NCBI RefSeq assembly: GCF_000143415.4
Contig: NW_003314291.1
Coordinates: forward strand, 821,702 to 885,701
Length of the DNA: 64,000 bases
DNA from: Selaginella moellendorffii
Taxonomy: Eukaryota; Plantae; Lycopodiophyta
Direction: 5' to 3'
Positions 1-23,230 of this stretch are shown piece after piece. Numbering within the stretch: position 1 is the first letter of the stretch; the number at the start of each line of letters is the position of its first letter. The translations under genes were made by a program, and so were the position numbers. Under the pieces are notes generated by a model. The model did not search any database, was not told the origin of the DNA, and saw only the letters and a program-made list of their open reading frames with translations.

Positions 1-1309
1 ATGCAAGCGCGAGTGGACGTCGATGCACACGAGAAACCTGTAGAGAAGTGAGCGTGATCGCGAGTGGGAGCGCGATGCGAGCGCGAGCGCGAGTACAAAG
101 CAAAATGCAAAACCTAACCTCACACGCGCGAAATGTCACAACGGTTGGTAATCCCGCCACGTCATCATTCCTCGGACTTGGGCGCCACCATTAATTTCTG
201 GATTGCCGCGCGCATGCAAGCACGCAAAATCCAAAAGAAATCCGCAACGTCATCATTCCTCGGACTGCATGCACGCGAAATCCAAAAGAAAGATCATGAT
301 TGGGATATCATTTAATACCCTCGCTATATTTATACCATGCATGATTGGATATTCCAAAGCATCTTGTATTTCCAAAAATGGCAGATGTTCAGCTAAATAA
401 AGAAATTCTATCTGTTTCTATTTTTCTCTCAAATCAATATTATAGCGTGTGGGCTCATGCAATTTTGAACCAAAGAAACCCAAAAAACGTTGGACCCAAA
501 ATATTTTGAAAAAACCCAAAAAACCCTAAACATTTTAAACCCAAAAATCCAGGCGTCCTGTGGCGTTATTCCTTGAATGGCGTGTGGGCGCATGCCATTT
601 TCAGGGCCAAATGCTGAATGGAGAAAAATTCCCTTTCAGTGCAAATGCTGCAAGAGGCAGATGCCGAGCACAAAGGACTGTAACTACCTCACATGACACA
701 GATAAACTTTTCTCTATTTGGCAAAGATAAACTTTATAGCGTGTGGGCTCATGCAATTTTGAACCCAAAAAATGCACCAAAAAATTCTCGGCGTCATCTG
801 GCGTTATCTCTTGAATGGCGTGGGGCCGCATGCCATTTTCAGGGGCACATAGGAGTATATTCCTAGGATATTCTGACACGCGCGAGATTTTTTTGAGTTT
901 TCTGGAGATCCAACCGTTAGATCGCAACTAAATTTTACAGAATGGTATACAATGTCTTTCTTGATGACCCTGCAAAGAAGCATCTCAATCGGACACCACA
1001 TGAGACCACACGAGCCTTACAATGTTTCAGGGGCATTTGCCATAGATCCGACCGTTATTTTGCTCCAAGATTTTACAGTTTGGTGTGCATTGACCTTTGC
1101 ATCGAAACTGCAAAGGGACATCACAATCAGATGCGGGATCACAAGAAACTAACTTCACTAACTCTGGTTTCACCAAGATCTACGTAAGGAGTTATGAAAT
1201 GAAAGGACCCTCTCTATTGAAATGTGTTTATGGTCCTAGGGGCATTGTGACATATCAAAGGATTTTGCATCAAGTTCTGTATTTGCATGTTTATCAAGCT
1301 ACTGAATTG

Positions 1310-1343
1310 CTAAACCCTAAACCCTAAACCCTAAACCCTAAAC
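1310..1343 (+). repeat. Interstitial plant telomeric repeat (CCCTAAA) x about 4.5
   Basis: ctaaaccctaaaccctaaaccctaaaccctaaac. Confidence 0.9.
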
Positions 1344-2611
1344 ATGTGGCAAATGCTGCGTGAAGAAAGATGCCCTTTCTGGGCAAATGCTGTAAGAGGC
1401 AGATGCCGAGCAGATGTATCTCAGGCTAGCGAAGGGGACGAACGAAAGCTAGCTATAAACATGACGGGATGCAAATAGATTACTAGGCTGGTCCTACGAA
1501 AATCAAAAACCATAATTGAAAACATTGAAAATGCAAAAAGAAAGGTTTATAATATTTTTGAATTTTAGGCAACCAAAGGAATGTAAGTAGGGCATGTGTT
1601 TGTAAGTTTAAAAATGCCTCAACCACTTAAATTCCCAAGTAAATAAAGCTGTTTCTATTTTTGGTACAGGTAAACTTTATAGCGTGTGGGCTCATGCAAT
1701 TTTGAACCCAAAAATGCACCAAAAAATGCTCGACTAGCATTATTCTTTGAATGGCGTGTGGCCTTATGTCGAGCATTATTCTTTGAATGGCGTGTGGCCT
1801 TATATTGCCATAAATGGACGTATACACACAGCGTAATTATTCCTTTACACGGCGAATAATCTTGGCGCGGATCGCTGACATGGCATGGCAAAGTTCGAAT
1901 CACTGACATGGCACAGCTGGATCGAGGCAAGGACATGATGTGACAAAGTTCAACCTCCGACAGCAAAGTCTAGAAGCTACTCAGTTTGAAATTTGTCAGA
2001 GGAATCATAAGATCTGGTTTGTCAGAGGATTTGATGTGACGTTCAAGCGTGTGTTATTTTTGAATTCTCGAACTCATTCCTAGGTCTATCATTTTTGTGC
2101 GCCGTGTTCTTGGTTCCGCTGAGCGCAGTGAGCGCTGCTTGTGTAAGCGGCGTTGTGGGCTGTGGTTTATGCGTCTACGAGCGGTTGCGGCATTGCGAGC
2201 GCCATTGCGAGCGGCAGTTTATGCGAGTGGCAGTTTGTGCGAGCGGCGCTACGAGCAGTTGCGGTGTTGCGAGCGGCGCTACGAGTAGTTGCCTTGCTGC
2301 AATTGTATATATTTTTGTATGGGTAACTAGCCACGCACACAAAAATATATACAGTTGCAGCAAGGCAAAAGGAATATGGCAACAGGCTAGCAGGGGCCAA
2401 AGATAGCGTGAGGCCTCATGCCATTAGTGGTACCACTAATGGCATGAGGGCTCATGCCAATTTTGTGAATGCGAAATTTCACGTGGGTGTCAATAGCATG
2501 TTTGAATAATGGCATGTGGCCTCATGCTATTGAGGTTGTTTGGTATGTTATGATTTAGGCCATTCTCCAATCATTTTTTGTATGGTCTTAACTTCTTTTC
2601 TGCACTTTCAG

Positions 2612-5600
2612 AATAGCCTTCAGGGTTGGGGAAAAGGTTTACATTTTGAATGGTGGGAAGAGAGTTGCAAAAGGGACCCTTGTGTCTATGGATCGGAACT
2701 TTGTTATACACTGTGAAAGGCTTGGGGAAGGCAATGCTGCTGTATCAGTAGAGACTGTCTTCGATGGGAATGTGGTCGCTATTGAACGAGGAGAGATGGT
2801 CGTCGGGGTAAATGTTGTTGTTGCCTTGAAAAATCTTCAGAAGAAAGCAGATGTTGGGGACAGCGCAAGTGCGACGCATGTTCCCTCCGTGGATCTTAAG
2901 AACCGTGCTACATGGATTCAGGCAAAAGTGTTTCTAAACAACCCCGAGGGGGAGGTGGTAGCTGAGGGCTTAGCCACAGTTGTCGATCCAAGAGATGCGG
3001 TTGCTAATCAAGAATTGGGCTGGGATGATATTGGAGTTGCGATTTTAGAGGTTGTTGACACAGAAGAAAACAGTCTGACTATTGGAAGCATTGTGCGGTG
3101 GAAATTGAGGCACTTAGTGTTTGAGAATGTGAAGGATTCACAATCAAACACCACTACAACTGATGACAGAACATCTCTTCATGGGAAAAGAAAGTACACC
3201 TTCCTAAAGCGCAGCCAAAGGGATCTGAGCAACGAACCGAAAAGGCAGAAAATGGCGATGGAGGTTCGAATGGTCTCGACAGTTGCTTGTTGCAAGAGGA
3301 GGTGCTGTCAACATGCTGATTGGGATGCTATTGAAGAGGAGAGAGCAAGATACAAGACATTGTCCTGGAAGGCAGCTCGCAATTTTGTGTATGAGGCATT
3401 ACGGTCATCTGTTGATGCTTCAGAACATCAGGTGGGGGGCATGGTCTTCCAGAGGGGTTTGGTCTGCATGAAGGCATGGAGAATCATTTATGGAGTCCCT
3501 CGAAGCACATTCTACAGAATCAAAACTGAGTTCGAGGAACAAAGGGTTCAACAGGCAGTCCATGGGAACGACGGTACGCACAAAACCAGGGGTCATGTTG
3601 TATATGGAGAGGCAATCTTCAAGAGGTTAGTCGAGACATGTAGCGAGCAGCAACCACATAAAACCCGACTCTTGGAAGATGGAACACGAGAAANNNNNNN
3701 NNNNNNNNNNNNNNNNNNNNNNNNNNNNNNNNNNNNNNNNNNNNNNNNNNNNNNNNNNNNNNNNNNNNNNNNNNNNNNNNNNNNNNNNNNNNNNNNNNNN
3801 NNNNNNNNNNNNNNNNNNNNNNNNNNNNNNNNNNNNNNNNNNNNNNNNNNNNNNNNNNNNNNNNNNNNNNNNNNNNNNNNNNNNNNNNNNNNNNNNNNNN
3901 NNNNNNNNNNNNNNNNNNNNNNNNNNNNNNNNNNNNNNNNNNNNNNNNNNNNNNNNNNNNNNNNNNNNNNNNNNNNNNNNNNNNNNNNNNNNNNNNNNNN
4001 NNNNNNNNNNNNNNNNNNNNNNNNNNNNNNNNNNNNNNNNNNNNNNNNNNNNNNNNNNNNNNNNNNNNNNNNNNNNNNNNNNNNNNNNNNNNNNNNNNNN
4101 NNNNNNNNNNNNNNNNNNNNNNNNNNNNNNNNNNNNNNNNNNNNNNNNNNNNNNNNNNNNNNNNNNNNNNNNNNNNNNNNNNNNNNNNNNNNNNNNNNNN
4201 NNNNNNNNNNNNNNNNNNNNNNNNNNNNNNNNNNNNNNNNNNNNNNNNNNNNNNNNNNNNNNNNNNNNNNNNNNNNNNNNNNNNNNNNNNNNNNNNNNCA
4301 AAAGAAAGAAAGACGGCATTGCAGCTAATGCATGCTGTTATATAAGCTTGTAACCACCCTTTTGGCATAATCGCTCATGGGCATGGTGCCCAAAACTATG
4401 GGAACTTCTTTGTACCTCTATGGGGTGGCGGGGGTGCAAACATGATGATTGCGTCCCTAGCAAAACACTTAAGGTCTCTGCAAAGTGCGCAGACTGAGCT
4501 GAACGGCCAACCCTTGCATAAGGCCCTTGTCGATCGAACCCCATACAGGGTTCAGCTGGAGGAGGAGCAAAGGCTTGCAGTATCGCGTGGGGCCCCATGC
4601 CATCCCAGTGAATATGTTGGCCGTCAGATTGTAGGGTTATCACGTGAGGCCTCATGCCATTCCGACGAGGCTGGTCGCCCGGTGAATGCACAGCCTCATC
4701 CAAACGAAGCAGAATCTCAAGGAAGTTCTTGCGGCCGATGTGGCCTTCCACCCCATCTTCTGCTCCAAACAGACAATGCTGGCAGTGAGAACAAAAACAT
4801 GTACGTCTTCGCGTACTTGGCGATGCTTGTTGCCAAAGGCATATTTGAAACGGTTACACTTGGCTTTCTCATGGTTGGGCACACTCATGAAGACGTCGAT
4901 GCCATGTTCAGTCACCTGGCAGAGTCCCTCCGGCGATCCAATGTCCTCACCCTCCCACAACTCTACGATGAATTCCAAAATTGCATCAAAGGCACTGTTG
5001 AAGCTGCACTTCTGACAGAGGTTCCAGACTTTAAGGGGTTTGTAAGAGGCTACATCAGGGATGGATCCGAAACGCTGATTGGCCACTCCAAGCCTCTTCA
5101 GTTTCATTTCAGCATGTGTGACGGTGCTCCAGTGATGAGGTACAAGATGAGAGAATGGGACACAGTGTGGCTGCCAGTGGACGGCATTGAACTCTTCAAG
5201 AGAGATCCCATAACTGGGGAACCTATGATTCCTCAAGGTTCCCCACGGCCGATGCACCCGGATGGACTCAAAGACCAGGAAAGTATAGTGGCCGGGATTA
5301 GACAGCATATTGCCTTCTGGAAGAGGGGGTTGGTGTTTGGTGGAGAATCCTATTTTTAGAGGTGCAAGCCTTTGCTCGAATACTGGGAGAAGATTATATC
5401 TGCTATCCAAAATGGGCCGGTTGTATATGAAGAATTGGAAGAGTCCTTTTGGCCAGAACCCAGAGCACCAGATAGTAGCGGAACAATGTCCTCTGGAAAT
5501 GCAGTGACAGATAACGATGTTGAGGATCACTATTGTGGGCCGAGGAACAAGAAGCCGGATTCAGCATTCAATCCAGTACAGGTCTGCAAAGGAATGGTCG

Positions 5601-9875: not shown

Positions 9876-10629
9876 AAACTTGGAAAGTAAACATTGAATG
9901 AATTAGTGCCAAGTGAACCCTTTAATGATACTCCGAAAGAAAGATGGAATGCTTCAGAGTCAAAGGAGGAGATTGCTACTCTCCCATGAAGATGAATAAA
10001 AGAGAAAGAGCGAAAGAAGAGAAATGAAAAAAAAGTTAAAAGGAAAGGGAGATCTAGACAATGCACAAGCTAGATCTAAACCAAAATCATGAAAGAAAAG
10101 AACAAAAGAAAGGAAATGGAAAAAACTAAATTTAGACAATACAAAAGCTAGATCTAAACTAAAATCCTAAATCCAAGCACTCCTCAGGGACAATCAAAAG
10201 TGTCCTTCAACTACACCAATATGAATGCATCGAATATAGAAAGGAAATATAGAAAATGTGTATATTAATTAGCTCAAAAACCCTAATTTATATACAAGAG
10301 CGAATGGTCCAGATTGAAATTAATCTGACACCTACCAAAATCCCATATGCTAATATTAATATATGGCATTGTAACTATACATTTAGACCTCACAATCTAT
10401 ATTAAGTTTCTCTTGGTTTTATGAATACCACTGATAACATGAATATAGGAAGTAGACTCATTCTCAACTTTTTTTCCTTTTTAAATCCTCTCTTTTGTGT
10501 GATTGCTTTCTTTTTGCTCTTTAAATATGATCAAATAGATATGATATCTATCATATAGATACTATATTTTTATATCTATCATACCATAATTATATGATCA
10601 TATGAATAATAACAGCTAAAACCTTCATC

Positions 10630-11400
<771 letters not shown>

Positions 11401-13099
11401 CACTCCATTTTACAAACTATATAACAAAATTTTATAATTTTTATATATATTTCAATGAAAATTAATATCCATTATGTCAAATTTGAGAATAAGGGATCAC
11501 AATTAAATAATTTGCAATATTATTGCAACAAAAAAGATTGTTAATGTATTTAATCAATTTCTACTATAAAATGTTATTATCATCTACAATTGCATATAGT
11601 AAAAAAATTAATTGGATTAAAAATTAAAATTTAATAAAAATGTTAAGTTTTTAATTTTATTTTTATAATAATAGAGATTTATAGCGATATTATAAAGATT
11701 AAGCTTTTGTAATTATGGATAATATTAAAGTATAATTTTTCTTAAGAAATTAAATTATGTAGTTTTAATTATAAAATATATTTACACATTTATAAATAAT
11801 AATAAAGTTTTTGGTATATTTTCTATTGTTCCACTTAATTCCATGAATAAATTTTATAAAAATAATAAATAAAACATTTTATAACTCTGGGTAAAAATAA
11901 TTCTTTAACTAAAGCTTTTATTCAAATAATTAAATTTTAAAATATATACCTTGAGACTATAAATATTAGGTATAAGACACATCCTTGATACCAAAATTTG
12001 TTAGACACACCCTGGAATTATAGAACTATCTTGGAATATAATAAATCATATTTCCTTGAAGGGGTTTTTCATATAAAGTGGAAACAATATAAAAAACTTT
12101 TATATAAATTTTAAATATCAACTTTTATAAGTGATTTATGTAACAAAAATTACATTTTATTTAATTTTATAGAAAGACAAATTGTTGCCATCAGATTTTA
12201 AAGTCTTTAAAAATATTTTAAAATTACTTTTTATTATTTCTATTTGATTTTTAAAATAATACTAAAAATGAAAATATTTATTTTGATAATTATCTTACAA
12301 TTAACTTCTTCTTTTTTTTTGTATCCAGTTTCATGTTTTACAACATGGTTTGTTGTCATCATCATTAGTGTATTATTCAATCTTATAGATAGTTAAAAAT
12401 AAATAATATATGATTTAAATTTAATACTATCTTATATAGTGAGTTTGAGTTTTGTCATTGTTTAAAAAAATTGTAAATGTAAAGAAATTTTGTATAGAAT
12501 AATATTTAATGTATATGGAATAAAATTTAATAAAATATGTCAACAGTTTATATATATAGAGAGAGAGAGAGAAAGAGACACACACACACATAATCAAATT
12601 TAAACTCTTAATTTTCAAATTCCGGGATAAAGAAAGTCAAAATAATTCAGAAAAACAAATTTAACAAATTTATTAAACCGAGATTTTTTTTTCTTACATT
12701 AGTCAATAATATAAATATTTACTAGGTTTATATCAGTTAGTCATTTTTAGTTTTAAAAAATGTCAGTTACTAAATTAACATAGTTTGAGGATCGAAACAT
12801 TGTTTCCACGTCAAAAAGGAAAACCAAAAAATGAAACTTCAAAATCCACTAGCCAGGAGGCAAACATTGAAGCATTGAGAAATGATTAACACGCCACTTC
12901 AATCAGAAGCACACAAACAACCATGAAGGACGCATTGTAAGAGATAAATTAGTCCGTGCAGAGATAGCACACGCCATCACGGCATAGTTCGTAGATGTAT
13001 TGGCCGGCCTCCACCCCTCCCCAGGTAGATTTTTCCGCTCGCCCACAACCAGTAGATTTGCTATGTTTCCTTTAGGGTTTAGTGAACGATATCTTGCGG

Positions 13100-13935
13100 C
13101 CGAGGAGAACTGGGAGAAAGCTCTAGCTAGTTAATTGATCGAGAAGGCGAGAACATTGCCTACGAAGTGGTAGAGGTTTGTCTCAATATTAGTGGACTCT
13201 TACGCTCGCTTCTCAGCATTTTTCGAGACACTTCCATTGTTTCTCTTCTTTTGGGACTGATAGTTTTTGCAGGGTAATCCAGCACAGAATTGGCACCCGG
13301 CCAGATCGCAATCTTTCGGATGCTGTGGACGCCCGCCAGGTTTTTCTCTAAGCTTTAGAGTTCCTTTTCCGTTTTTGGTTCTAACAGATGTCTAGGAGAT
13401 CGATGTACGTAGAGGTGCTTCCTTCACTCGCTTTCAGACAAGGACCGCTTTGTTCTTCCATTTGACGAGCCATTCTTAGCTATGGCCCGTACCAGGTAAC
13501 GAGAGAAAAGAGAATCTCCATTAACATACTCAAGGCTTTGTCGTTGAAAGATACTGGCAAGTTCATCCTGAAGGTTTTTGGACCATAAACTGCGTGTACA
13601 GCTCGGAGAACGATGGAGCGTCCTTCAAATGGGCGTAAGTCGTAGCTTGCTTAGTTTCCACGTTTCGCAGGCGTGGCCATCTCTTCGACTATGTACCCGC
13701 CGTTGCCATATATGAAATGTGCGTGGAAGAGCCTCTTGCTACGGTTAAATTATCTTCCTTTCATCATTCGTACACGCTCGAAAGATTACCTTGGGTCTCA
13801 GGAGACAATGAAGGTGTGAATCTCTAAGCTGTTGGTTCGTGTTTATCAATCGGCAACCTTTGAACTTGCAGGCCGCGGAAGAGCTCTACCAACAAGGATT
13901 CATCCGCTATCCCCGGGCTCAGTCAGATTACTTTT
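13100..13935 (+). pseudogene. TOP3A: DNA topoisomerase III alpha relic (exons eroded, GT-AG introns retained)
   Basis: Ordered motifs lie in successive mini-exons: DREGENIAYEVVE (13137-13175), NLSDAVDARQ|EIDVRR, SYGPYQ, SFKWA|RGHLFDY and ETMK|AAEELYQQGFIRYPRAQSD (13872-13928, the catalytic-Tyr motif). Confidence 0.85.
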
Positions 13936-14149
13936 CGGAGAGCACTGCTCTTCGAGTGTGTGTTGCATAGGTTCCTAGTCACCTTGAGCTGATATCGACA
14001 AAGCTCACCCGCCTGTAGTTCTACAGAGGGATGCTTGCATTGCAAAGCTCCTTGAGAATTTTTAACTTGGAAAGTAAGTGTGCCATAAAGCTTTGCACAT
14101 GAACTACTCATGTTCTGTTTTATTGCAGCTTTGGAAAACTGAGATAGTA

Positions 14150-15781
14150 ATGGCTGCTTTACAAAATCCTCCAGAAACACTTTGGACCAGGAAAACATTT
14201 ACGAAGCAGGAACAACACCAGGACATAGCGGTGCTGATAAATGCCTTGAAGCAGTGCAGACGTTCAAAGGACCTGGAGAAGGGACGGAAAATTCATGCAG
14301 AAGCAATCGAAAGCGGCAGCATCTCGAACATTTACGTGTCAAACACTCTGATCGACTTCTATGCAAAGTGTGGGAGCATGAACGAAGCTCGCAGTGTGTT
14401 CGACAAGCTGCAAGCCCGCGAAGTGGTGTCCTGGAATACTCTAGTGATGGGCTACGTGCGAAACGGACAGAGTGACCTCGGCTTGGATTTATTTTCAGCC
14501 ATGCTGGCCGAGGGCTGTGCTCCAAACGGCAGAACTTTCGTTGCTGCGCTCAAGGCTTGTCTCGGTCTGGCTGAGAACGAAGACGGCAAGAAGATCGACG
14601 GCAAATGGATGAAGGCTAGATCTCTGGAGCAAGTAATGGCACTTCATGTCCTGGCTGTGAATTACGGGTGCGAGCTCGAACTTTTCGTGGCAAGCAGCCT
14701 GGTTGACGTTTATGCCAAGTGCGGGGCCTTGCGAGATGCTCAAAGAGTTTTCGACAGGATGAAGTTTCGTGGGGTAGTTTCATGGACTGCTTTGATGCTC
14801 GGGTACATTGAAAGCGGGAAATCCGAAGTTGCCATGAAGCTATTTCCTGGCTTGCTAGCACAGGGGTGTGGGACTGATGCTCGGGCTCTTGTTGCGGTGC
14901 TGAAAGCCTGCACCAATGTTGCTGCTCAAGAGGAAGGAACAAAAGCTGGCGATGGCAAGGTCGTGAAGTTGGTTCTTTTGGAAAGAGGCATGGCTATACA
15001 CAGAAAGGTTTTGAGGAGTGGCACCTTGGATATCTTCGTCCTCAACACGCTTGTGGACTTGTACGCTTCGTGTGGGAGCATGGTGGACGCTCAGAGAGTC
15101 TTCGATACAATGCCTCGACGTGATGCCGTGTCCTGGAACGTTTTGATGCTGGGCTACGTGCAAAACCAGGAGTTTGCTGCCGCTCTCAGCGTGTTCTCGC
15201 TCATGATGCAATCCCGGGACAGCACTCCAAACTACTTGACGTTTGTCGCTGGATTGAAGGCTTGTGGGAAGTTGATGGTTTCGGAGACTGGAAGACGAGT
15301 TCATGCGGAGCTTTGCAGGCGTGGCCTGGAGAACGATGCGGTTCTAGCAGCTTCACTGGTGGACTTTTATGGGAAGTCCGGAAGAATGGTGGATGCGGAG
15401 GTTGTGTTTGATGCTACCGTGAAAAGGGATGTTGTGACATGGACTGCTCTAGCAGTGGGCTACTGCCGGCAAGGAAACACCAAGCAAGTTCTTGAGATCT
15501 TCCACAGAATGCAAGAGAAAGGACTACAGCCTGACGGGATAATGTTTCTCTCCATCTTGACTGCGTGTAGTCACGCTGGTATGGTAAATGAGGCTAAGCT
15601 CCTTTTTGAAGTGATGCGGTCGAAGTATGGGGTCAGCCCGGACATTGAGCACTACCACTGTATGGCAGATCTATTGGGACGTGTAAGCCAAGTCGACGAA
15701 GCGGTGGATGTGGTAAAAACCATGCCCTTTAGAGCGAATGTTGTTACGTGGACCACGGTGCTGGGTGCTTGCCGGAAGTAA
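14150..15781 (+). CDS. PLS-class PPR protein, ending within the E domain
   Basis: P-L-S motifs (YAKCGS..EARSVFD, DVVSWN), then LTACSHAG...HYHCMADLLGR...WTTVLGACRK*. The ATG at 14150 follows a splice acceptor at 14128; the true N-terminus is uncertain. Confidence 0.9.
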   Translation: MAALQNPPETLWTRKTFTKQEQHQDIAVLINALKQCRRSKDLEKGRKIHAEAIESGSISNIYVSNTLIDFYAKCGSMNEARSVFDKLQAREVVSWNTLVMGYVRNGQSDLGLDLFSAMLAEGCAPNGRTFVAALKACLGLAENEDGKKIDGKWMKARSLEQVMALHVLAVNYGCELELFVASSLVDVYAKCGALRDAQRVFDRMKFRGVVSWTALMLGYIESGKSEVAMKLFPGLLAQGCGTDARALVAVLKACTNVAAQEEGTKAGDGKVVKLVLLERGMAIHRKVLRSGTLDIFVLNTLVDLYASCGSMVDAQRVFDTMPRRDAVSWNVLMLGYVQNQEFAAALSVFSLMMQSRDSTPNYLTFVAGLKACGKLMVSETGRRVHAELCRRGLENDAVLAASLVDFYGKSGRMVDAEVVFDATVKRDVVTWTALAVGYCRQGNTKQVLEIFHRMQEKGLQPDGIMFLSILTACSHAGMVNEAKLLFEVMRSKYGVSPDIEHYHCMADLLGRVSQVDEAVDVVKTMPFRANVVTWTTVLGACRK

Positions 15782-16039
15782 ATTTCACTTGCGTTATGTG
15801 ATTTTGACGTGGAGATTACCGTCATGCAGAGTTCTTTTTATCAGCAAAGGAAGGTATTCCTTCGGGTCTCCAAAGAGAAGCGAGGGACATACTTATCCAA
15901 TTATCTAAGTGAGCTACTCGTCAAGCCAAGGTCAAAAAGGTGCTAGAGAAACAATCAGGTTTCTGAAATGTGGAGAGGAGTGGTTTCAGCTATGAGCTTT
16001 TGAGTTTTCCGTGATTAACTGGAGCACTTTAGTCGTGCT

Positions 16040-16330
16040 AGCAGCAAACCCGCACAGGAGAAGCTGAAGGCCTTTAGAAGCATTTCCCATATGAAAACCT
16101 ATGGAAGTATGGGGAGTGTTTGACAAGGTAGAACACGATGTGATCTCATGAATAGAGTATGCTCAGAATACACAGCCTGGAGTTATTTGCAACAATGGCT
16201 TTCCAACAGCATTCAGCCAAAACTCGCTGAGCGTCCGCTGTTGAGAAGAGTATTTAGCTCTCCCTTGAGAAGCCTTCACAGGCCAAGCTTCTGTGAACTC
16301 CTGTTTCTCTGCTAGCCATGCACGGTCATA
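16040..16330. pseudogene. Scrambled PPR relic paralogous to the PPR gene at 36.8-39.7 kb
   Basis: Plus-strand pieces (aaacccgcacaggagaa; ggaagtatgg..gtgtttgacaag) are followed by a minus-strand piece encoding AWLAEKQEFTEA, compared with AWLAEKEEFTEA at about 38735. Confidence 0.7.
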
Positions 16331-17516
16331 GTGAGCAGATTTTAACAAGCCTTCCTCAGGTGTTGGTTTATTTATCAGCTGAATGTGACTTCAGTAGTCT
16401 AGCTTTTGAGTCTCCACCATCCCAAAGTTGAGAGGGGACCACAACCATTAGGAAACTTGCAAACAATCGAGTCATATGGACGTGACTGGTCAACTTCTAA
16501 CAGTTCTCGAGTTTTACAAATAAATTTATTTATTCAATTCTATCTAATAAACACTGCTTAGTGGCATATTACTAAGTTAAAATCATTTTAATTTTTAGGA
16601 ATATAATAAAATTATTATTATTAAAATGCATTTTTGTTTTATCAACAATTTTTTGATTTCCATATCAAATAATACTGCACAAAAAATTAGTTTAAATTAT
16701 AATATAAGAATATACAAGGGCACATTCACAAATACGTAAAATTGTAAGACTTTTGTTTAATAATATTAACTATAACTTTTTTGTCAAAATCAAATGTTTA
16801 TAATTATTCTTGGATCACAAAAACTGAGTCATATATTCATGTTAGCATAGCATTATTAATTTTAATTTAATTTATGTTTTAGATTCTTTATAATTAAAAG
16901 AAACAGTGGTAAAAAAGTAATTTAAGCTATATATACTAAATATCAAGATAGTGTAAAAAATTTAAGCCAACTAAGAAAATTTATAATTTATTTATTAAAT
17001 AGTTATTTTTAATTTGATTTATTTTTTGAAATTGTTTTGGCTAAAATTTTAGATGAGATGCATAAATGCATGTAAATAGTGATGAAATTTCAAGAATGTA
17101 GATTATTTTATTCCACATAATCAACAACCATCATATCAATCTTCTATAATTCTTTAAAATCAAATAGCATAAATTATTTGTTATATAAATTATGAATTAC
17201 AAAATAATAATAATTTTAAAAAATCAACAACAAAATGGGTATGAAAGGAGTATTTTGTACTTAATAATAATTTCTCCTTTTGTCCTCCTATTTTTAAATA
17301 TCTTTAAAAATTAAAAACTATTAAATATTAACTTCAGGAAATTAATCTCATTAATTGTCTAGGGTTTATAGGATTAGGGTTTGGATATTTTGTGTGAAGA
17401 GGGGGAAATGCGCGATCGATCGGAGCAGGGGCGAGGAGGGACTGGATGTTAGGCAGCAGGGCCGCCAGCAGGAAAATGCTTTGGTCCAGATTTGGGCCTG
17501 GATCGGGCTGAGCATT

Positions 17517-19300
17517 ATGATGTATAGCGCATGGATTGGGTTCCAGCGCGCGAGCAGATGCCCGGATCGGGAGATTACCATCGCCAATTCGATCCTAGCT
17601 GCGATCAATGCGCTGATAGCTATTGCGGCATTTTCACAGGCAGGGCAAAATTTTTCCTTCCGCAGTTTTCTCTCTTTAATCAAACAAAACTCTCGCAGCT
17701 TCTTCGATTGTACTTGTATACTCTGCCATTGCGGTGGACACGGCAAAAGGTATGCCTGTATTCTTCTCTCGATCACTGTTTTTCCCTTCCAGGTTTTTCA
17801 TTGTTTGATTGGCGTGGCGAGTCTTGGTACGCTTGTTAGCTAGTGTAAAATCCTTGCGTTACACAGGTTTTGGACAGGATATTGTCTATATTTCGTGCTA
17901 AACGTGATTGCACCCTGCCAAGGATGGTATTGCTGGAAGCATGCGTGTGGATTTATAGCCATGGGTACGTCTTTAATGTGTGTGCTTGGCTCGTTTTACT
18001 GACAACGAGTGTTTCTTTATTGATGCAGCTGTTCCTCAGATACTGTTTCTTGCTACCTTCTTGCTGTTGTTATCGTTCTGGTACGCTTCCTTTTGTCTAG
18101 TGTATCGAGAAACTTATCCTCTATCAGGGTGGATCTTTGTCATCAAGCCACAGATAAGGAAGAGGAGGAGGATGACGAGGAAGAAACTGATGGAGCTCAA
18201 GCACAGGCTACAGTCGGCAAGGATCCCAAAGTCCCAGTGCACACGGACAAGCATCGCCGCTGTTGTCATTGGTGGAGATCCAGAATTCATGGCCGTCAGA
18301 AGTTTGTGATAGCGGTGAGTTTCCAAGTTACTTGGGTATTTGGTACTAACTTGAATTATTTTTGAAGGTTGTGATGCTGATATTCATGATCACCTTAGTC
18401 TGTGCAATTCTGATATGGATCGGGATGGGGGACAACTTCATAGACTCTGGGACTGTTGCCGAGGTGACAAATAATTATTGGTCCATGCTGCGTTGACATG
18501 ATACTTGCTTGCAGATCTACTCGGATATGCTTGCCATTGTTATTTTTTTGTCCGGTGGGGGCCTGGCAGGATATGGTATGAGGGTTCCTTTCGGGAACCG
18601 TATGTTCTAATCAAGGCTTTTCCAGGACTTGCATTATATACAAGGATGAGCAGGCTGCGTGTTGGAAAGACATCAGCAGAGTTACAAAAGGTTTGAATCT
18701 TTTTCGTTTTCTGGAAATATGAGGGGAAACTCTCAAGTTTATTTGCTCTCAGGTAGCAGGGTTGGCAGTCGTATCGGTGCTGTGCTTCTCCATACGTGCT
18801 CTTTTCATTCTTTTGGGCGTAAGTCCTGATTCCACTTTGTGCGACATCAGCTATGGTGGGCCTATTTTGCAGGTGTTTAAAATTCGCAGCCGATACACGT
18901 CCGTAGTATTCTTTCTGTATTCATTCATAGGTATGGATGCATTTCAGAAGTAATCTTTGATGGTTTGCGGTTTGTTGTTTAGGTGAAGTGATACCTTGCG
19001 TGGTGGTGCTCTGGGTGATGAGGAATAATCCGTCACGACTGAGCAGTACGCAGAGTCGGCGGTCCGTGACCTCGGTTTCCGGCTATCAGCAAGCTTTAGC
19101 GCAAGAACAGGCACTTCTGCAGCAGTGGATAGTTCCGGATGATATGGAGTCGATCATTGTGGCGTCTAGCAGAAGCAGGAGGAGCAAGTCTGGAAGAGTA
19201 GCCGATTCTTCAGAGGTACGAATGTTGTGTTTTTGCTCTCTCATCCATCAAGCTCCACTTGCATTTTACTTTCCAGGGAAGCACAAGCAATTCTGGCTAA
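17517..19300 (+). CDS. THH1/TOM1/TOM3-domain (DUF1084) multi-pass membrane protein, multi-exon
   Basis: Spliced reading gives NSILAAINALIAIAAFSQ-LLR..RWTRQK-VFHCLIG..VPQILFLATFLLLLSFW-VDLCHQATDKEEEEDDEEE..GEVIPCVVVLWVMR. The stop is TAA at 19298-19300. Confidence 0.8.
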
Positions 19301-19982
19301 ATAAAAGCAGCGGTGTAAATACCGATTCTTTCATTTGTAATTCAGGAATTTGGCTCTGTGCCTCTGTTTTGTGGAGCTGCTGGTAACTCCTACATTCTTT
19401 TCTCCAGGACGCCTATCGCAAGCACGCAAAGTGCCATGTCTAAAAGAGATGCGAAAGCTTTCATTGAGAGGATCACCAGCGGAAAAAGTCAGTGTAAGTC
19501 AATAAAAAGTCAAGAAGTAAATGAAAGTCAATGGTATTGAAAGTTGTCTTGCTTCATTTAACTCATTCGCTGAGAGCCAAGAAGCACACTCACACAATGT
19601 AAGAGCGCTGAAAAGCTCCAGGCGGTGTCCGAAATGCCCCACCTGCAAAAGGAGACCGTGCACAATGGAGCTGGGACTCGGCCGAGATGGACGAGACGCT
19701 GGCAGTGTGCCACATCACGCGCCTCTCCGACGCCGAGAGGAGCGCGTGTGCTGGGACGCTGGGTTGGGATGGTGCGCGGGAGCAACTGGATTGCATGGTT
19801 GATTTTGCTCGCCAGCAGCTGCTCTCGACTGGATCAGCTGGAATTGTTAGCCTTGCGTCGCTTGACAAGACGAGGAGGTGAGTGAACACTTGGAGCGCAT
19901 ACTCCATAAACCAAGTTTTTCAACGATTGTTACACAAAGTTCTTCCACTTCTTAAGGTTGTATCCTTCGTTTTTGTTTCCCT

Positions 19983-20770
19983 TTGCTAGTGAGTTCTGAG
20001 TTGCCTGCACGCAACACCATCGCATGGATTATTGCAGAGATCTTGTTTCACAGAATGCTTACCTCCGACGTGGTTTCCACGACTGCTATGTTATCAGCAT
20101 ATGCCCAAAGCGGGCATATTCTTAAATCTAACAGATTGTTTGAGAGAATGCCCGAATGGAACTTGGTCTCCTGGAATGTGATGCTCGCTGCTCACACCCA
20201 AAGTTTCCATTCCTTGGAAGTGAAGAGTCTCTTCAAATCAATGCCAGTCATGGATTTGGTGTCATGGAATGAATGGAAGCTCTCTGGAAGAAGCAAGGCA
20301 AGTCTTCGAAGTCATGCCAGAAAGAAGTATAGTTTCCTGGAACACTCTTCTTTCCTCGTTCGCGCAGCACGGGCATTTAGAAGAGGCCAAGCAATTTTTC
20401 TCGGCAATGCCGGAGCACGACTTGAAGGCCTGGAACTCGATCCTCTCGGGCTCCGCGAACTTTGAGAACTTTCGCGAGATACTGCGCCTCTTTGGAGCAA
20501 TGCCTGCGAGAGATTTGATATCCTGGACTGTTCTCCTTCCAGAATGGTTTCGTCGATCGAGCCACCAAGATCCTGGAGCGGATGGAGCAGCGATGCCTGG
20601 AGCGTGATGCTCGCTGGCCTTGCTCACGGCAGCTACTTCCACCGAGCTATAGAGACGTTCCACTCGATCAAAACCACGTCTACACCTGACGAGACGTGCT
20701 TTGTGCTGGCCCTGCTAGCTTGCGGCCACGCCGGGAGAGTGCGCTGCTTCGTCTCGATGAGCTTGGATTT
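19983..20770 (+). pseudogene. Frameshifted PLS-PPR pseudogene
   Basis: S-type motifs (MPEWNLVSWNVML, MPERSIVSWNTLL) and LLACGHAG are split across three frames. Confidence 0.8.
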
Positions 20771-20911
20771 TAAAACGCGCCTGTGTTGTTTCCAAGATTT
20801 CTGTTGGAAGAAGTCCCGATGCATATGGGCTTTCAGTTCTGTCTATCCATTTTCTGGCTATCAGGAGAGATTTCCCGCCTGGCACTTAGGGTTTTTGGTC
20901 TGGAGAATCTC

Positions 20912-22787
20912 ATGGCGCTGGCGCTCGAAGAGCAAGATAGATCGATTGCTGGCGGAAATTTCATGGTGGAGGCTGCTCGATTCTGGCCGCGGTGCCATGG
21001 CGATGCTCGATGCCGGTGCTGCGATGACGAGGCTCGATTCCGGGATGTCTGGCCGTGCCGCGATGGTGAGGGTCGATTCCGGCCGCCGTGCGATGGCGAT
21101 GATCGCCCGTTCGATGGCGATGATCGCTGCTTCCAGCCGCCGTGCGATGGCAAGGCTCGATTCCGGGATGTCTGGCTGTGCCGCGATGGTGAGGGTCGAT
21201 TCCGGCCGCCGTGCGATGGCGATGATCGCTGCTTCCAGCCGCCGTTCGATGGCGATGATCGCTGCTTCGAGCTGCCGTGCGATGGCGATGCTCGATTCCG
21301 GGATGTCTGGCCGTGCCGCGATGGTGAGGGTCTATTCCGGCCGCCGTGCGATGGCGATGATCGCTGCTTCCAGCCGCCGTTCGATGGCGATGATCGCTGC
21401 TTTGAGCTGCCGTGCGATGGCGAGGCTCGATTCCGGGATGTCTGGCCGTGCCGCAATGGTGAGGGTCGATTTCGGCCGCCGTGCGATGGCGATGATCGCT
21501 GCTTCCAGCCACCGTGCGATGGCAAGGCTCGATTCCGGGATGTCTGGCTGTGCTGCGATGGTGAGGGTCGATTCCGGCCGCCGTGCAATGGCAATGATCG
21601 CTGCTTCCAGCTGCCGTGCGATCGCTGCTTCCGACCGTGCTGCAAGGTTTGGATGTTTGCTCCTGCCACAAACACCATCCAGGTGAGTACTGTTATTAGT
21701 TTTTTAATATAGTAATGCTTATGTGTGCTTTTCAATACTTTATAGGGCAACCAGGCAAAACATGATTCCACTCTACTAGAGATTGCTCCTGTTACAAAGG
21801 CCTTCCAGGTATTTTCTTTATTTTCGCAGATTTTTAATAGTAATGTTTAATCACATGTTTTATAACAGGTGGATCCTAAGCCAGGTGGATCCTAAGCCAG
21901 GACGTCTTTTTCCAGACAGGTTTATTTATATTACATTGTTGTTATTGATAGTATTGATTACTCTTTTTTTTTTCAGATCAAATTCTTTTAAAAGCAACAC
22001 AATTATTCTTGGATTTGTTTGGGATCACGGAAACTATGTAATATGTTCAGGTTAGTTTTAAATTATTAATGGAGTTATAGTTTTAACAATTTATGTTTTA
22101 GATTCCCGTCAAGTGATGGTGAATTCAAGATGTCAGGATAAAAATGCAATTAGGAAGAAGAAGGTGGTAAAATTGAGGATTGGTAAACAAGAGGAATATC
22201 ACGAATATCAAGATGGAGCAGAAAAATTAATTTAACCAAGGCAATCTCCATTTACTACTATTGGTTTCTCTGGTAAGACTTTTCTATTTTAAATGTTTGG
22301 TTTGTAAATTTTGTTTTTTTAGGTAATGGCTCTGGGATAGCTAAGGCTTTGGAAGAAATTAAAAAGATGAATGGAGATGCTGGTGATATCTCAAAAAGGT
22401 TATGTGCTTTACTCAACAAAGAATCATGGAAGATAGACATAATGGTAGTTGGTTATATTGGACGAGGTAATTTTAGTTTATTTGTTATTTAAATTCTAAT
22501 AATTTGACTTTTTTTCAGTGGCAAAGCTATTTCTCATTGTCGAGACAGAGCCAAAGAAATGGGTGGTAAAGGAAGTGAAGGAAGGGTGTATTGGCTCTGG
22601 AACTCCCTATGCTTTACCAGTTTTGAGGAGATCTCTTCACCGAGCCCGTGATATCAACGAGAAGACAGCTGCACAGATCGCTCTCAACGCTACTAGTGTT
22701 GCAATCGACAATGATCCTAACTGTGGCTATCCCATGAAGTGTATTGTTTTTGGGAAGATCGGGCACAACAGAGAGTATAAACAATGA
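20912..22787 (+). pseudogene. Cys-rich repeat peptide fused to a divergent proteasome-beta/Ntn-hydrolase-like domain; 7-exon model, probably disabled
   Basis: Exons 20912-21682, 21746-21808, 21885-21919, 21977-22050, 22102-22272, 22323-22466 and 22519-22787 have GT-AG introns and compatible phases. The domain reads TIILGFVWDHGNYVICSDSR...EKLI*...IGFSG...IMVVGY...CIGSGTPYALPVL...AAQIALNATSVAIDNDPNCG. There is an in-frame TAA at 22233-22235 and a 16-bp duplication at 21869-21900. Confidence 0.65.
20995..21640 (+). repeat. GC-rich higher-order tandem repeat; 30/33/39-nt subunits, all multiples of 3
   Basis: Subunits encode DGEGRFRPPC, DGDDRCFQPP(C/F) and DG(K/E/D)ARFRDVW(P/L)CR; the last occurs 5 times. 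Confidence 0.92.
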
Positions 22788-23230
22788 GAGTCTACAGTGG
22801 AGTACTTTGTACCAGTCTTCTGGTAAGTTTTTTTTTATACTTCATGATTCTTATTGGTTATTAATGTTACAGACTACAAACGTTACTGGAAATTGTAAAT
22901 TCACGAAGTGATTGTTCGCGCTGAGCATTGTCAGTGCATGATGGGATTGGGTTCAGGACGATTACTGCGCTGGGCAGTTGTGAAATTACATCTTAACCCT
23001 TTGAGAGGATGAAAAAGTGGGTGTATAGCGAAACTCAGCCATTTTACTAAAAACGACACTTGAATAACTTGCTTTTTCCTGGTTGGCCATGCGCTGTTCT
23101 CACTATATATTAGAGGCCATATTTAAAAAATATATGTCGCTAAAACAAAAAGTTTCAAATGTCCTAGATGTTGAACTTGGAGCATTAACACTTGGAGCAT
23201 TAACCTCATGCAAAGAATCAAACAGAAACT

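What the first reader, a model, noticed from the sequence alone, without database searches (positions are those of the whole stretch)
20912..22787. Tandem Cys-rich peptide repeats spliced in frame to an orphan proteasome-beta/Ntn-hydrolase-like domain
Seen: a telo-box followed by ATG 20912 opens a 257-codon exon of DGxxR-initiated units (RFRDVW[P/L]C x5, DGEGRFRPPC, DGDDRCFQPPC). Two micro-exons join it, with matching splice phases, to four AT-rich exons that the ORF track shows only in pieces. The domain aligns by eye with the proteasome beta pattern: T1 (TIILGF), xDSR, a Lys in EKLI, GFSG, VVGY, GSG-x-YA and NDPNCG (cf. RDxxSG). The Gly before Thr1 is replaced by Asn and there is a basic insertion. 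It is far more divergent than the normally conserved beta1-7 subunits. Inference: this could be a stand-alone self-processing threonine protease whose very long propeptide is an array of near-identical cores, reminiscent of fused precursor-enzyme systems such as plant BURP-domain RiPP precursors. Alternatively it is a lineage-specific or horizontally acquired Ntn family. This copy looks disabled (TAA at 22233, 16-bp duplication at 21869), so intact paralogues would be the target.
Basis: partly seen in the sequence, partly recalled or inferred. Interest (0 to 1): 0.8.

Follow-up and report, generated by a model that had tools for sequence, protein, structure and literature searches.

The report
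Decayed spikemoss proteasome-like gene copy
This stretch of the spikemoss Selaginella moellendorffii is a broken, unselected copy of a plant-only gene whose last four exons encode a very distant relative of the proteasome's cutting subunit; its "peptide repeats" are a recent DNA-level repeat expansion, not a selected array of peptide precursors.

Summary
The window is Selaginella moellendorffii scaffold GL377595.1. It carries a 771-nt GC-rich first exon with Cys-rich repeats, two micro-exons and four AT-rich exons, and the splice phases fit.

The last four exons encode a very divergent proteasome-beta/HslV-like Ntn domain:
- Weak but concordant profile hits come from Pfam, NCBIfam and PHROGs.
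- The ESM Atlas model matches beta subunits at TM 0.81.
- The only relative among 1.84 billion representative proteins is this locus's own annotated model, EFJ22536.1.

The RiPP-like reading is not supported:
- The repeat is open in four of six frames, and the annotation reads it in another frame.
- Its variants are 2 synonymous to 15 non-synonymous.
- A paralogous locus on scaffold GL377644.1 has the segment unexpanded.

That locus holds two more copies of the domain exons. Against them, exons and introns are equally diverged (82%), and differences fall evenly over codon positions. They also show that the TAA at 22233 derives from CAA, and that the 16-bp duplication breaks a conserved exon phase.

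Verdict: a pseudogene copy of a lineage-specific chimeric gene.

The scan has flagged similar proteasome-like domains before, on other DNA of this genome, some reported as expressed. Whether this copy belongs to that family could not be tested here.

The parts
19983..20779 (+). Truncated, frameshifted PPR pseudogene directly upstream. This is context, not part of the gene.
   Evidence: Pfam PPR hits at E 3e-10 and 1.6e-14 fall on two different frames. The homologue at L084 19352-20680 is an intact 442-aa ORF. Synteny with L084 ends at 20779.
20886..20894 (-). Telo-box (AAACCCTAA), 18 nt upstream of ATG 20912.
   Evidence: There are 12 matches in the window against 0.54 expected. The paralog has a mutated version at the homologous place.
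20912..21682 (+). The GC-rich tandem array spans about 20981-21640.
   Evidence: The array is open in 4 of 6 frames. It is expanded relative to L084 3101-2837.
21746..21808 (+). Micro-exon 1 (63 nt, phase 0-0).
   Evidence: It has exon-like composition (48% GC, 22% T) between T-rich 60-63-nt introns. The annotated model skips it. The L084 copies carry 1-2-nt deletions here.
21869..21884 (+). Extra copy made by a 16-bp tandem duplication at the acceptor of micro-exon 2. It causes a frameshift if the outer acceptor is used.
   Evidence: TRF finds period 16, 2.2 copies, 100% identity. The paralogous exon is 68 nt, the same phase as the 35-nt form and not the 51-nt form.
21885..21919 (+). Micro-exon 2 (35 nt).
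21977..22050 (+). Domain exon 1, holding the candidate Thr1 (KSN|TIILGF).
   Evidence: It is 92-93% identical to the L084 copies, which keep N|TI[IV]LGF.
22102..22272 (+). Domain exon 2. It holds the Asp17-like SDSR, a basic stretch, two Lys33 candidates, and an in-frame TAA at 22233-22235.
   Evidence: Both L084 copies read CAA at the TAA position. The distal 90 nt is exon-like in composition. The annotated model removes it through the alternative donor 22182|GTAAAC.
22323..22466 (+). Domain exon 3 (helices H1-H2 region).
   Evidence: The secondary-structure order appears.
22519..22787 (+). Domain exon 4. It holds the GSGTPYA (Ser129) and NDPNCG (Asp166) motifs and the stop TGA at 22785.
   Evidence: Pfam PF00227 E 0.0022. 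TIGR03634 E 0.0018. PHROG 1040 E 0.0015. hhalign against HslV gives P 9.7e-5.
22823..22872 (+). 50-nt intron-like element in the 3' UTR (GTAAGT...CAG).
   Evidence: Read directly from the sequence. Its composition is intron-like.

Best explanation
This locus is a non-functional, neutrally evolving copy of a Selaginella-specific chimeric gene.

Its ancestral form had a promoter-proximal telo-box. It had a GC-rich, Cys-rich first exon, two small linker exons, and four AT-rich exons encoding a very divergent proteasome-beta/HslV-type Ntn-hydrolase domain.

In an intact version, everything upstream of the Thr in KSN|TIILGF would be a propeptide, removed when the domain cleaves itself to expose Thr1. 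That step is inferred from the family and is not shown here.

Three things have happened in this copy:
1. The first exon was inflated about threefold by minisatellite-type duplication of a 135-bp unit. This is what produces the near-identical 'peptide units'.
2. A 16-bp duplication at the acceptor of micro-exon 2 shifts the frame.
3. A CAA-to-TAA change stops the reading frame in the core of the domain.

The database protein EFJ22536.1 (434 aa) is an ab initio model that threads around both lesions. It reads the repeat in another frame, skips micro-exon 1, and uses an internal donor.
For: Identity of the locus: S. moellendorffii GL377595.1, model SELMODRAFT_416369.

Fold:
- The ESM Atlas's own model of residues 247-434 matches proteasome-beta clusters at TM 0.81 over 174 residues.
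- By language-model features, 21 of 30 nearest clusters carry PF00227, with a top score of 0.95. One search gave a similar picture for the last exon alone.

Profile hits all fall on the same region and are collinear:
- PF00227, E 0.0022.
- TIGR03634, E 0.0018, and TIGR03690, E 0.011.
- PHROG 1040 (HslV family), E 6e-4, aligning residues 260-431 to profile positions 18-165.
- hhalign against 13 HslV sequences, P 0.0022 over 118 columns.
- Archaeal beta chain 3h4p aligns GSG and the Asp166 motif.

Exon model: sharp exon/intron composition contrast and 50-76-nt introns.

Paralogues at L084 (GL377644.1):
- The codon at the window's TAA is CAA in both copies.
- Their micro-exon 2 is 68 nt, in phase with the 35-nt form.
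- Their repeat segment is about 265 nt, against 736 nt here.

No selection:
- Exons are 82.2% and 82.9% identical to the two paralogues, introns 82.3% and 82.6%.
- Differences by codon position are 22:16:17 and 16:8:12.

No other product: nothing like exon 4, the domain, or the repeat peptide exists in the 5.8-billion-cluster collection within the length ranges searched.
Against: - All seven donor/acceptor pairs are intact, and only one stop lies in about 212 AT-rich codons. This copy is much better preserved than its paralogues.
- The G-to-A bias suggests most divergence lies on the paralogues' branch. This copy may therefore have died recently, and selection on its own branch cannot be excluded.
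- An in-frame path avoiding both lesions exists (the annotated model), and the Atlas folds that product into the beta fold.
- All repeat sub-unit spacings are multiples of 3, and ATG 20912 is the first ATG after the telo-box. The Cys-rich frame may therefore have been truly coding.
- No RNA-seq was examined.
- My own AlphaFold2 run without an alignment failed, with pLDDT 35.
Confidence: 0.7

Rival explanations
1. The annotated model is right. The locus makes a 434-aa protein with an Ala/Met/Arg-rich repetitive N-terminus and a compact proteasome-like domain. The 90 nt holding the TAA, and micro-exon 1, are intronic.
For: - The path is open, and both alternative sites have GT/AG borders in matching phase.
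- hhalign aligns RKKK-VVKLRIG-NGSG to the HslV region around Lys33 with only a 3-residue gap.
- The Atlas model of this product has the beta fold.
Against: - It needs introns of 140 and 186 nt where all others are 50-76 nt.
- Those long introns would contain segments with exon-like composition.
- The skipped 90 nt is an open, conserved continuation of the exon in paralogue a, and mostly so in b, reading EKLVQPRQSPFTTIGF.
- The cluster holds only the original GenBank entry and no RefSeq accession.
- There is no exon-versus-intron conservation difference.
Confidence: 0.1
2. One reading: a fused precursor-enzyme system. Tandem Cys-rich cores are released or processed by the attached self-activating threonine protease, by analogy with BURP-domain RiPP precursors.
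For: - Repeat exon and domain exons are linked at two independent loci.
- Sub-unit lengths are multiples of 3.
Against: - The multi-copy array exists only in this broken copy. The paralogue has the single form, with a stop in that frame.
- Variants are mostly amino-acid-changing and include Cys-to-Phe in the supposed cores.
- No similar peptide repeat scored among proteins of 141-450 aa, the only length range this query reaches.
- There is no BURP or other peptide-modifying domain.
- The gene is disabled.
Confidence: 0.04
3. The unit of first exon plus domain exons is cargo of, or is moved by, a mobile element or recurrent segmental duplication. The copies are silenced repeats rather than decayed cellular genes.
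For: - There are at least three copies, two of them in tandem.
- They sit in different places and orientations relative to the same syntenic PPR/TOM1-3 block.
- Synteny breaks exactly at the unit's left edge, where a PPR gene is truncated.
- The strong G-to-A bias is typical of methylated repeats.
- Unchecked scan notes report this type of domain joined to scavenged pieces of many genes.
Against: - No terminal inverted or long direct repeats flank the unit.
- No transposase lies inside it.
- The right edge of the unit could not be defined, because the paralogous locus is cut off.
Confidence: 0.15

Closest known systems
20S proteasome beta subunits (Pfam PF00227, MEROPS family T1; archaeal beta TIGR03634)
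   Same: - Predicted alpha-beta-beta-alpha fold (TM 0.81 to beta-subunit clusters).
- Collinear motifs: an N-terminal Thr after a pro-region, Asp in SDSR, a Lys candidate, G-S-G (Ser129) and D-x-x-C-G (Asp166/Gly170).
- It would be made with a propeptide.
   Different: - Scores are below the curated thresholds: 18.1 against 22.4 bits, and 17.9 against 224 bits.
- Asn replaces Gly at position -1, and Cys replaces Ser169.
- There is an insertion of about 22-25 residues around Lys33.
- It is not one of beta1-7, it has no detectable orthologues outside this plant, and this copy is broken.
HslV (ClpQ) and phage HslV-like peptidases (PHROG 1040; the PPH and AAH groups of Fuchs et al. 2021, PMC8665760)
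   Same: - The best local sequence match is the GSG-x-PYA ... AR[DE]I-EK block (BLASTP E 0.009; hhalign P 9.7e-5).
- The PHROG 1040 alignment covers nearly the whole domain.
- The nearest Atlas clusters by features are viral proteasome-like proteins of the same size.
   Different: - HslV starts Met-Thr with no propeptide and works with HslU. Here there is no ATG before the Thr and there are spliceosomal introns.
- No close relative turned up in phage, viral or prokaryotic collections, so recent transfer has no support.
[quoted passage not shown]
Divergent proteasome-beta-like domains flagged elsewhere in this genome by this scan (stand-alone, or fused to fumarase, TOM2A, sirtuin or PPR pieces)
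   Same: - Same species, and the same kind of very divergent beta-like domain at the 3' end of a chimeric gene.
- A PPR fragment lies directly upstream here too.
   Different: - Membership was not tested, because their sequences could not be fetched.
- My searches with this copy found none of them. If related, they are below roughly 30-35% identity.
- This copy has four introns in the domain, whereas some of those are described as intronless.
BURP-domain fused RiPP precursors
   Same: Tandem short peptide units lie upstream of an enzyme-like domain in one reading frame.
   Different: - There is no BURP domain.
- The units are not conserved between paralogues.
- There is no selection signal.
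- The enzyme-like domain is a protease fold, not a cyclase.

Membership tests
Proteasome beta / PF00227 (Ntn hydrolase, MEROPS T1) | Match to the family profile at or above the curated threshold | tested here: not met
   - PF00227 scores 18.1 bits against a gathering score of 22.4, on the last exon only.
- There is no hit on the whole annotated protein.
- TIGR03634 scores 17.9 against a cut-off of 224.
Proteasome beta / PF00227 (Ntn hydrolase, MEROPS T1) | Four-layer alpha-beta-beta-alpha Ntn fold | tested here: met
   - The ESM Atlas model of residues 247-434 reaches TM 0.81 over 174 residues against two PF00227 clusters.
- Both sides are predicted models.
- My own AlphaFold2 run was uninformative, with pLDDT 35.
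Proteasome beta / PF00227 (Ntn hydrolase, MEROPS T1) | Nucleophile Thr1 exposed by autolysis after Gly-1 | tested here: inconclusive
   - A Thr sits at the expected place (KSN|TIILGF) and is kept in both paralogues.
- Position -1 is Asn.
- The profile alignments start after this residue, and exon 1 alone gives no significant match.
Proteasome beta / PF00227 (Ntn hydrolase, MEROPS T1) | Asp17 and Lys33 | tested here: inconclusive
   - hhalign pairs the Asp of SDSR with HslV Asp17.
- The stop codon lies two codons after the second candidate.
Proteasome beta / PF00227 (Ntn hydrolase, MEROPS T1) | Gly-Ser129-Gly, Asp166 and Ser169 | tested here: met
   - GSG aligns.
- D-N-D-P-N-C-G aligns to E-R-D-T-F-S-G of chain 3h4p.
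- Ser169 is Cys here.
Proteasome beta / PF00227 (Ntn hydrolase, MEROPS T1) | Intact reading frame | tested here: not met
   - There is a TAA at 22233, which is CAA in the paralogues.
- The 16-bp duplication shifts the frame.
HslV | Met-Thr start without a propeptide, with an HslU partner | tested here: not met
   - There is no in-frame ATG in the micro-exons or exon 1.
- The neighbouring genes are PPR, TOM1-3-like, DENR and cystatin.
Fused RiPP precursor (BURP type) | Conserved multi-core array plus a peptide-modifying domain | tested here: not met
   - The array is unexpanded in the paralogue.
- Variants are 2 synonymous to 15 non-synonymous.
- There is no BURP hit.
Selaginella-specific proteasome-like family noted by this scan | Detectable sequence similarity to its other members | not testable with these tools
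   - The notes give no sequences.

The most novel reading that the evidence does not exclude
Selaginella carries an undescribed, plant-only branch of the proteasome-beta/HslV superfamily. Its members are built as chimeras because the domain cuts itself free at Thr1, so any scavenged upstream exon is tolerated as a disposable propeptide. This locus would be a recently dead, intron-bearing copy that preserves the ancestral exon structure of that branch.
Probability: 0.2. Interest if true: 0.6.

Novelty: new variant of a known kind. Interest (0 to 1): 0.3.

Why it matters
The survey by Fuchs et al. [quoted passage not shown] A plant-specific, highly divergent beta-like domain recurring in chimeric genes would add a eukaryotic branch to that picture. 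It would also raise the question of what a free-standing threonine protease does in a plant.

This copy contributes little to function, because it is broken and unselected. It does give three things:
- the intron-exon structure of such a domain;
- a clean example of how an ab initio gene model can thread around lesions;
- a warning that an open Cys-rich tandem repeat can be a minisatellite artefact.

Better targets are the members that the scan notes report as expressed elsewhere in this genome.

Tried and rejected
- AlphaFold2 on the annotated protein without an alignment gave pLDDT 35. It was unusable for fold search, so no fold search was run.
- Exon-by-exon hhalign against an HslV alignment was significant only for exon 4. 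Exons 1-3 gave P 0.24-0.53, and the HslV set was too uniform, at 85-99% identity.
- Pfam on the whole annotated protein lost the Proteasome hit.
- PDB phmmer gave only E 0.43 to an archaeal beta chain and an unrelated hit for the whole protein.
- tblastn against phages, and pattern scans of viral contigs and of 185,579 prokaryotic genomes, found nothing. Recent horizontal acquisition is therefore unsupported.
- The word search has a blind spot for relatives of 155-238 aa, which no referenced query could cover.
- No paper mentions the locus tag or a Selaginella proteasome-like family.
- Pieces between the repeat and the domain in the paralogous locus look to me like the N-terminus of a retinoblastoma-related protein. 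That is from memory. Pfam gave no hit, so it stays unverified.
Per the operators' note, exons were searched by reference one at a time, and the only joined sequence used was the database protein P0001, which lacks 30 residues of exon 2.
- No contig looked human.

Full report
**What is there**

The window is Selaginella moellendorffii scaffold GL377595.1 (window coordinate + 821,701). The region carries the GenBank model EFJ22536.1, SELMODRAFT_416369, UniProt D8RZ26, 434 aa. Its neighbours are a PPR gene, a TOM1-3-like gene, DENR, a cystatin, an AP2 gene and RPB9.

- ATG 20912 opens 257 codons that end at a CAG|GTGAGT donor at 21682.
- The exon contains RFRDVW[P/L]C five times, along with the DGEGRFRPPC and DGDDRCFQPPC units.
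- Tandem Repeats Finder reports a 135-bp unit, 3.1 copies, 95% matches, with 33-bp sub-units.
- Downstream, exons at 21746-21808, 21885-21919, 21977-22050, 22102-22272, 22323-22466 and 22519-22787 have GT/AG borders and compatible phases.
- The composition contrast is sharp. Introns are 50-76 nt, 15-25% GC and 48-60% T. Exons are 30-51% GC and 22-36% T.
- The TAA at 22233 and the exact 16-bp duplication at 21869 are real.
- The telo-box at 20886-20894 is one of 12 in the window against 0.54 expected. Others sit near gene 5' ends, so a promoter here is plausible.

**Is the C-terminal part a proteasome-like domain?**

At the sequence level the evidence is weak but concordant. The last exon hits four independent profiles:
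- Pfam PF00227, E 0.0022, 18.1 bits. This is below the gathering score of 22.4.
- Archaeal beta TIGR03634, E 0.0018, and bacterial beta TIGR03690, E 0.011.
- PHROG 1040, "peptidase HslV family", E 0.0015.

With the annotated protein, PHROG 1040 aligns residues 260-431 to profile positions 18-165 at E 6e-4. hhalign against 13 HslV sequences aligns 118 collinear columns at P 0.0022. The best local block is GSG-x-PYA...AR[DE]I-EK. An archaeal beta chain, 3h4p, aligns the GSG and D-x-x-[SC]-G motifs.

The fold evidence is stronger. The ESM Atlas holds this protein. Its own model of residues 247-434 matches proteasome-beta clusters at TM 0.81 over 174 residues, and 21 of the 30 nearest clusters by features carry PF00227 (for the last exon alone).

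My AlphaFold2 run without an alignment failed, with pLDDT 35. Exons 1-3 alone give no significant match. The Thr1 and Lys33 assignments therefore rest on position and reading by eye.

There are two Lys33 candidates:
- RKKKVVKL fits HslV spacing.

**Is it an orphan?**

phmmer of the last exon against 1.84 billion representative proteins found only this locus's own model. Word searches with the domain (239-760 aa), with the last exon (48-154 aa) and with the repeat peptide (141-450 aa) found nothing else. Phage, viral-contig and prokaryotic-genome scans were empty. A blind spot remains at 155-238 aa.

The survey by Fuchs et al. [quoted passage not shown] No paper mentions this locus.

**Paralogues**

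I reached a second scaffold through the neighbouring single-exon PPR protein. Its 90% cluster holds XP_024516830, which is encoded on GL377644.1 (locus L084).

L084 is collinear with the window from 10394 to 20779 at about 92-93% identity. Synteny stops about 100 bp before the homology of the repeat gene begins. In L084 the PPR gene at that edge is an intact 442-aa ORF. In the window it is frameshifted and truncated at 20779.

The repeat-plus-domain unit lies elsewhere in L084, at 1-3101 on the other strand. It consists of:
- a first-exon homologue of about 265 nt;
- 1.1 kb of other exon-like pieces;
- a domain copy truncated after exon 3;
- a second tandem copy that runs off the locus.

No gene is called there.

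**What the paralogues show** (alignment A2)

1. Both L084 copies read CAA where the window has TAA. The 90 nt that the annotated model splices out reads on as EKLVQPRQSPFTTIGF in both copies. Paralogue a has no stop anywhere in exon 2, and paralogue b's two stops lie upstream of this stretch. So that segment is exon, and the TAA is a nonsense mutation.
2. Their micro-exon 2 is 68 nt. This is the same phase as the window's 35-nt form and not the 51-nt form, so the 16-bp duplication is a frameshift lesion.
3. Several window repeat blocks map onto one L084 interval. The array therefore expanded locally in this copy.
4. Exons are no better conserved than introns: 82.2% against 82.3% for one paralogue, and 82.9% against 82.6% for the other. 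Differences fall 22:16:17 and 16:8:12 over codon positions. There is no sign of purifying selection.
5. The L084 copies have their own stops, frameshifts, lost splice sites and a roughly 50-70-nt insertion. A strong G-to-A bias (62 against 18) suggests most decay is on their side. The window copy is the best preserved of the three.

**The repeat exon**

Among repeat copies, variable sites fall 8:5:4 over codon positions.

- All sub-unit spacings are multiples of 3.
- ATG 20912 is the first ATG after the telo-box.
- That frame fits the pre-duplication splice phase and runs on into the next exon-like piece in L084.

So the Cys-rich frame may have been the real pro-region. The multi-copy array, however, is a recent DNA-level expansion in a dead copy, not a selected set of cores.

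**Verdict**

This is a pseudogene copy of a lineage-specific chimeric gene with a very divergent proteasome-beta/HslV-like domain (confidence 0.7). The rivals are:
- the annotated protein is real (0.1);
- a mobile or segmentally duplicated repeat unit (0.15, not exclusive with the main reading);
- the RiPP-like precursor (0.04).

**Earlier notes of this scan**

Unchecked notes report a small Selaginella-only family of such domains. Some are stand-alone and reported as expressed. Others are fused to fumarase, TOM2A, sirtuin or PPR pieces. They shaped my reading that the upstream partner is incidental. I could not fetch their sequences, so membership of this copy in that family is untested.

The joined sequence was not built. 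The only joined sequence used was the database protein P0001.

Noticed in passing
window 19983-20779; L084 19352-20680: A PPR gene is an intact 442-aa ORF on scaffold GL377644.1. In the window it is frameshifted and cut off at 20779, exactly where synteny between the two scaffolds ends and about 100 bp before the repeat gene's homology begins.
   Followed up: partly
window 10394-20779 vs L084 7519-20286: The two scaffolds share a collinear block (PPR gene, TOM1-3-like gene, PPR gene) at only about 92-93% nucleotide identity. This looks more like a segmental duplication, or very diverged haplotypes, than ordinary alleles.
   Followed up: no
L084 2845-1795 (minus strand): Between the first-exon homologue and the domain copies lie exon-like pieces, one duplicated about 115 bp apart. 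By eye and from memory they resemble the N-terminus of a retinoblastoma-related protein (the AERIWMACMLYIVKKL piece). Pfam gave no hit.
   Followed up: partly
L084 about 1305-1235 and about 375-325 (minus strand): Both paralogous copies carry an AT-rich, partly palindromic insertion of about 50-70 nt at the exon 1 / intron junction that is absent from the window. It may be a small MITE-like element.
   Followed up: no
window 1312-1341 and 12 sites overall: AAACCCTAA occurs 12 times against 0.54 expected. This includes a short run of four overlapping telomere-type units at 1312-1341, and single telo-boxes near the 5' ends of the TOM1-3-like gene (17374) and the RPB9 gene (30357).
   Followed up: partly
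window 22823-22872: A well-formed 50-nt intron-like element (GTAAGT...CAG, T-rich) lies 36 nt downstream of the stop codon, in the presumed 3' UTR.
   Followed up: no
window 17235-19881: The upstream neighbour is a THH1/TOM1-3-domain gene (PF06454). Another scan note reports a TOM2A protein fused to a proteasome-like domain elsewhere in this genome. I examined no link between the two.
   Followed up: no
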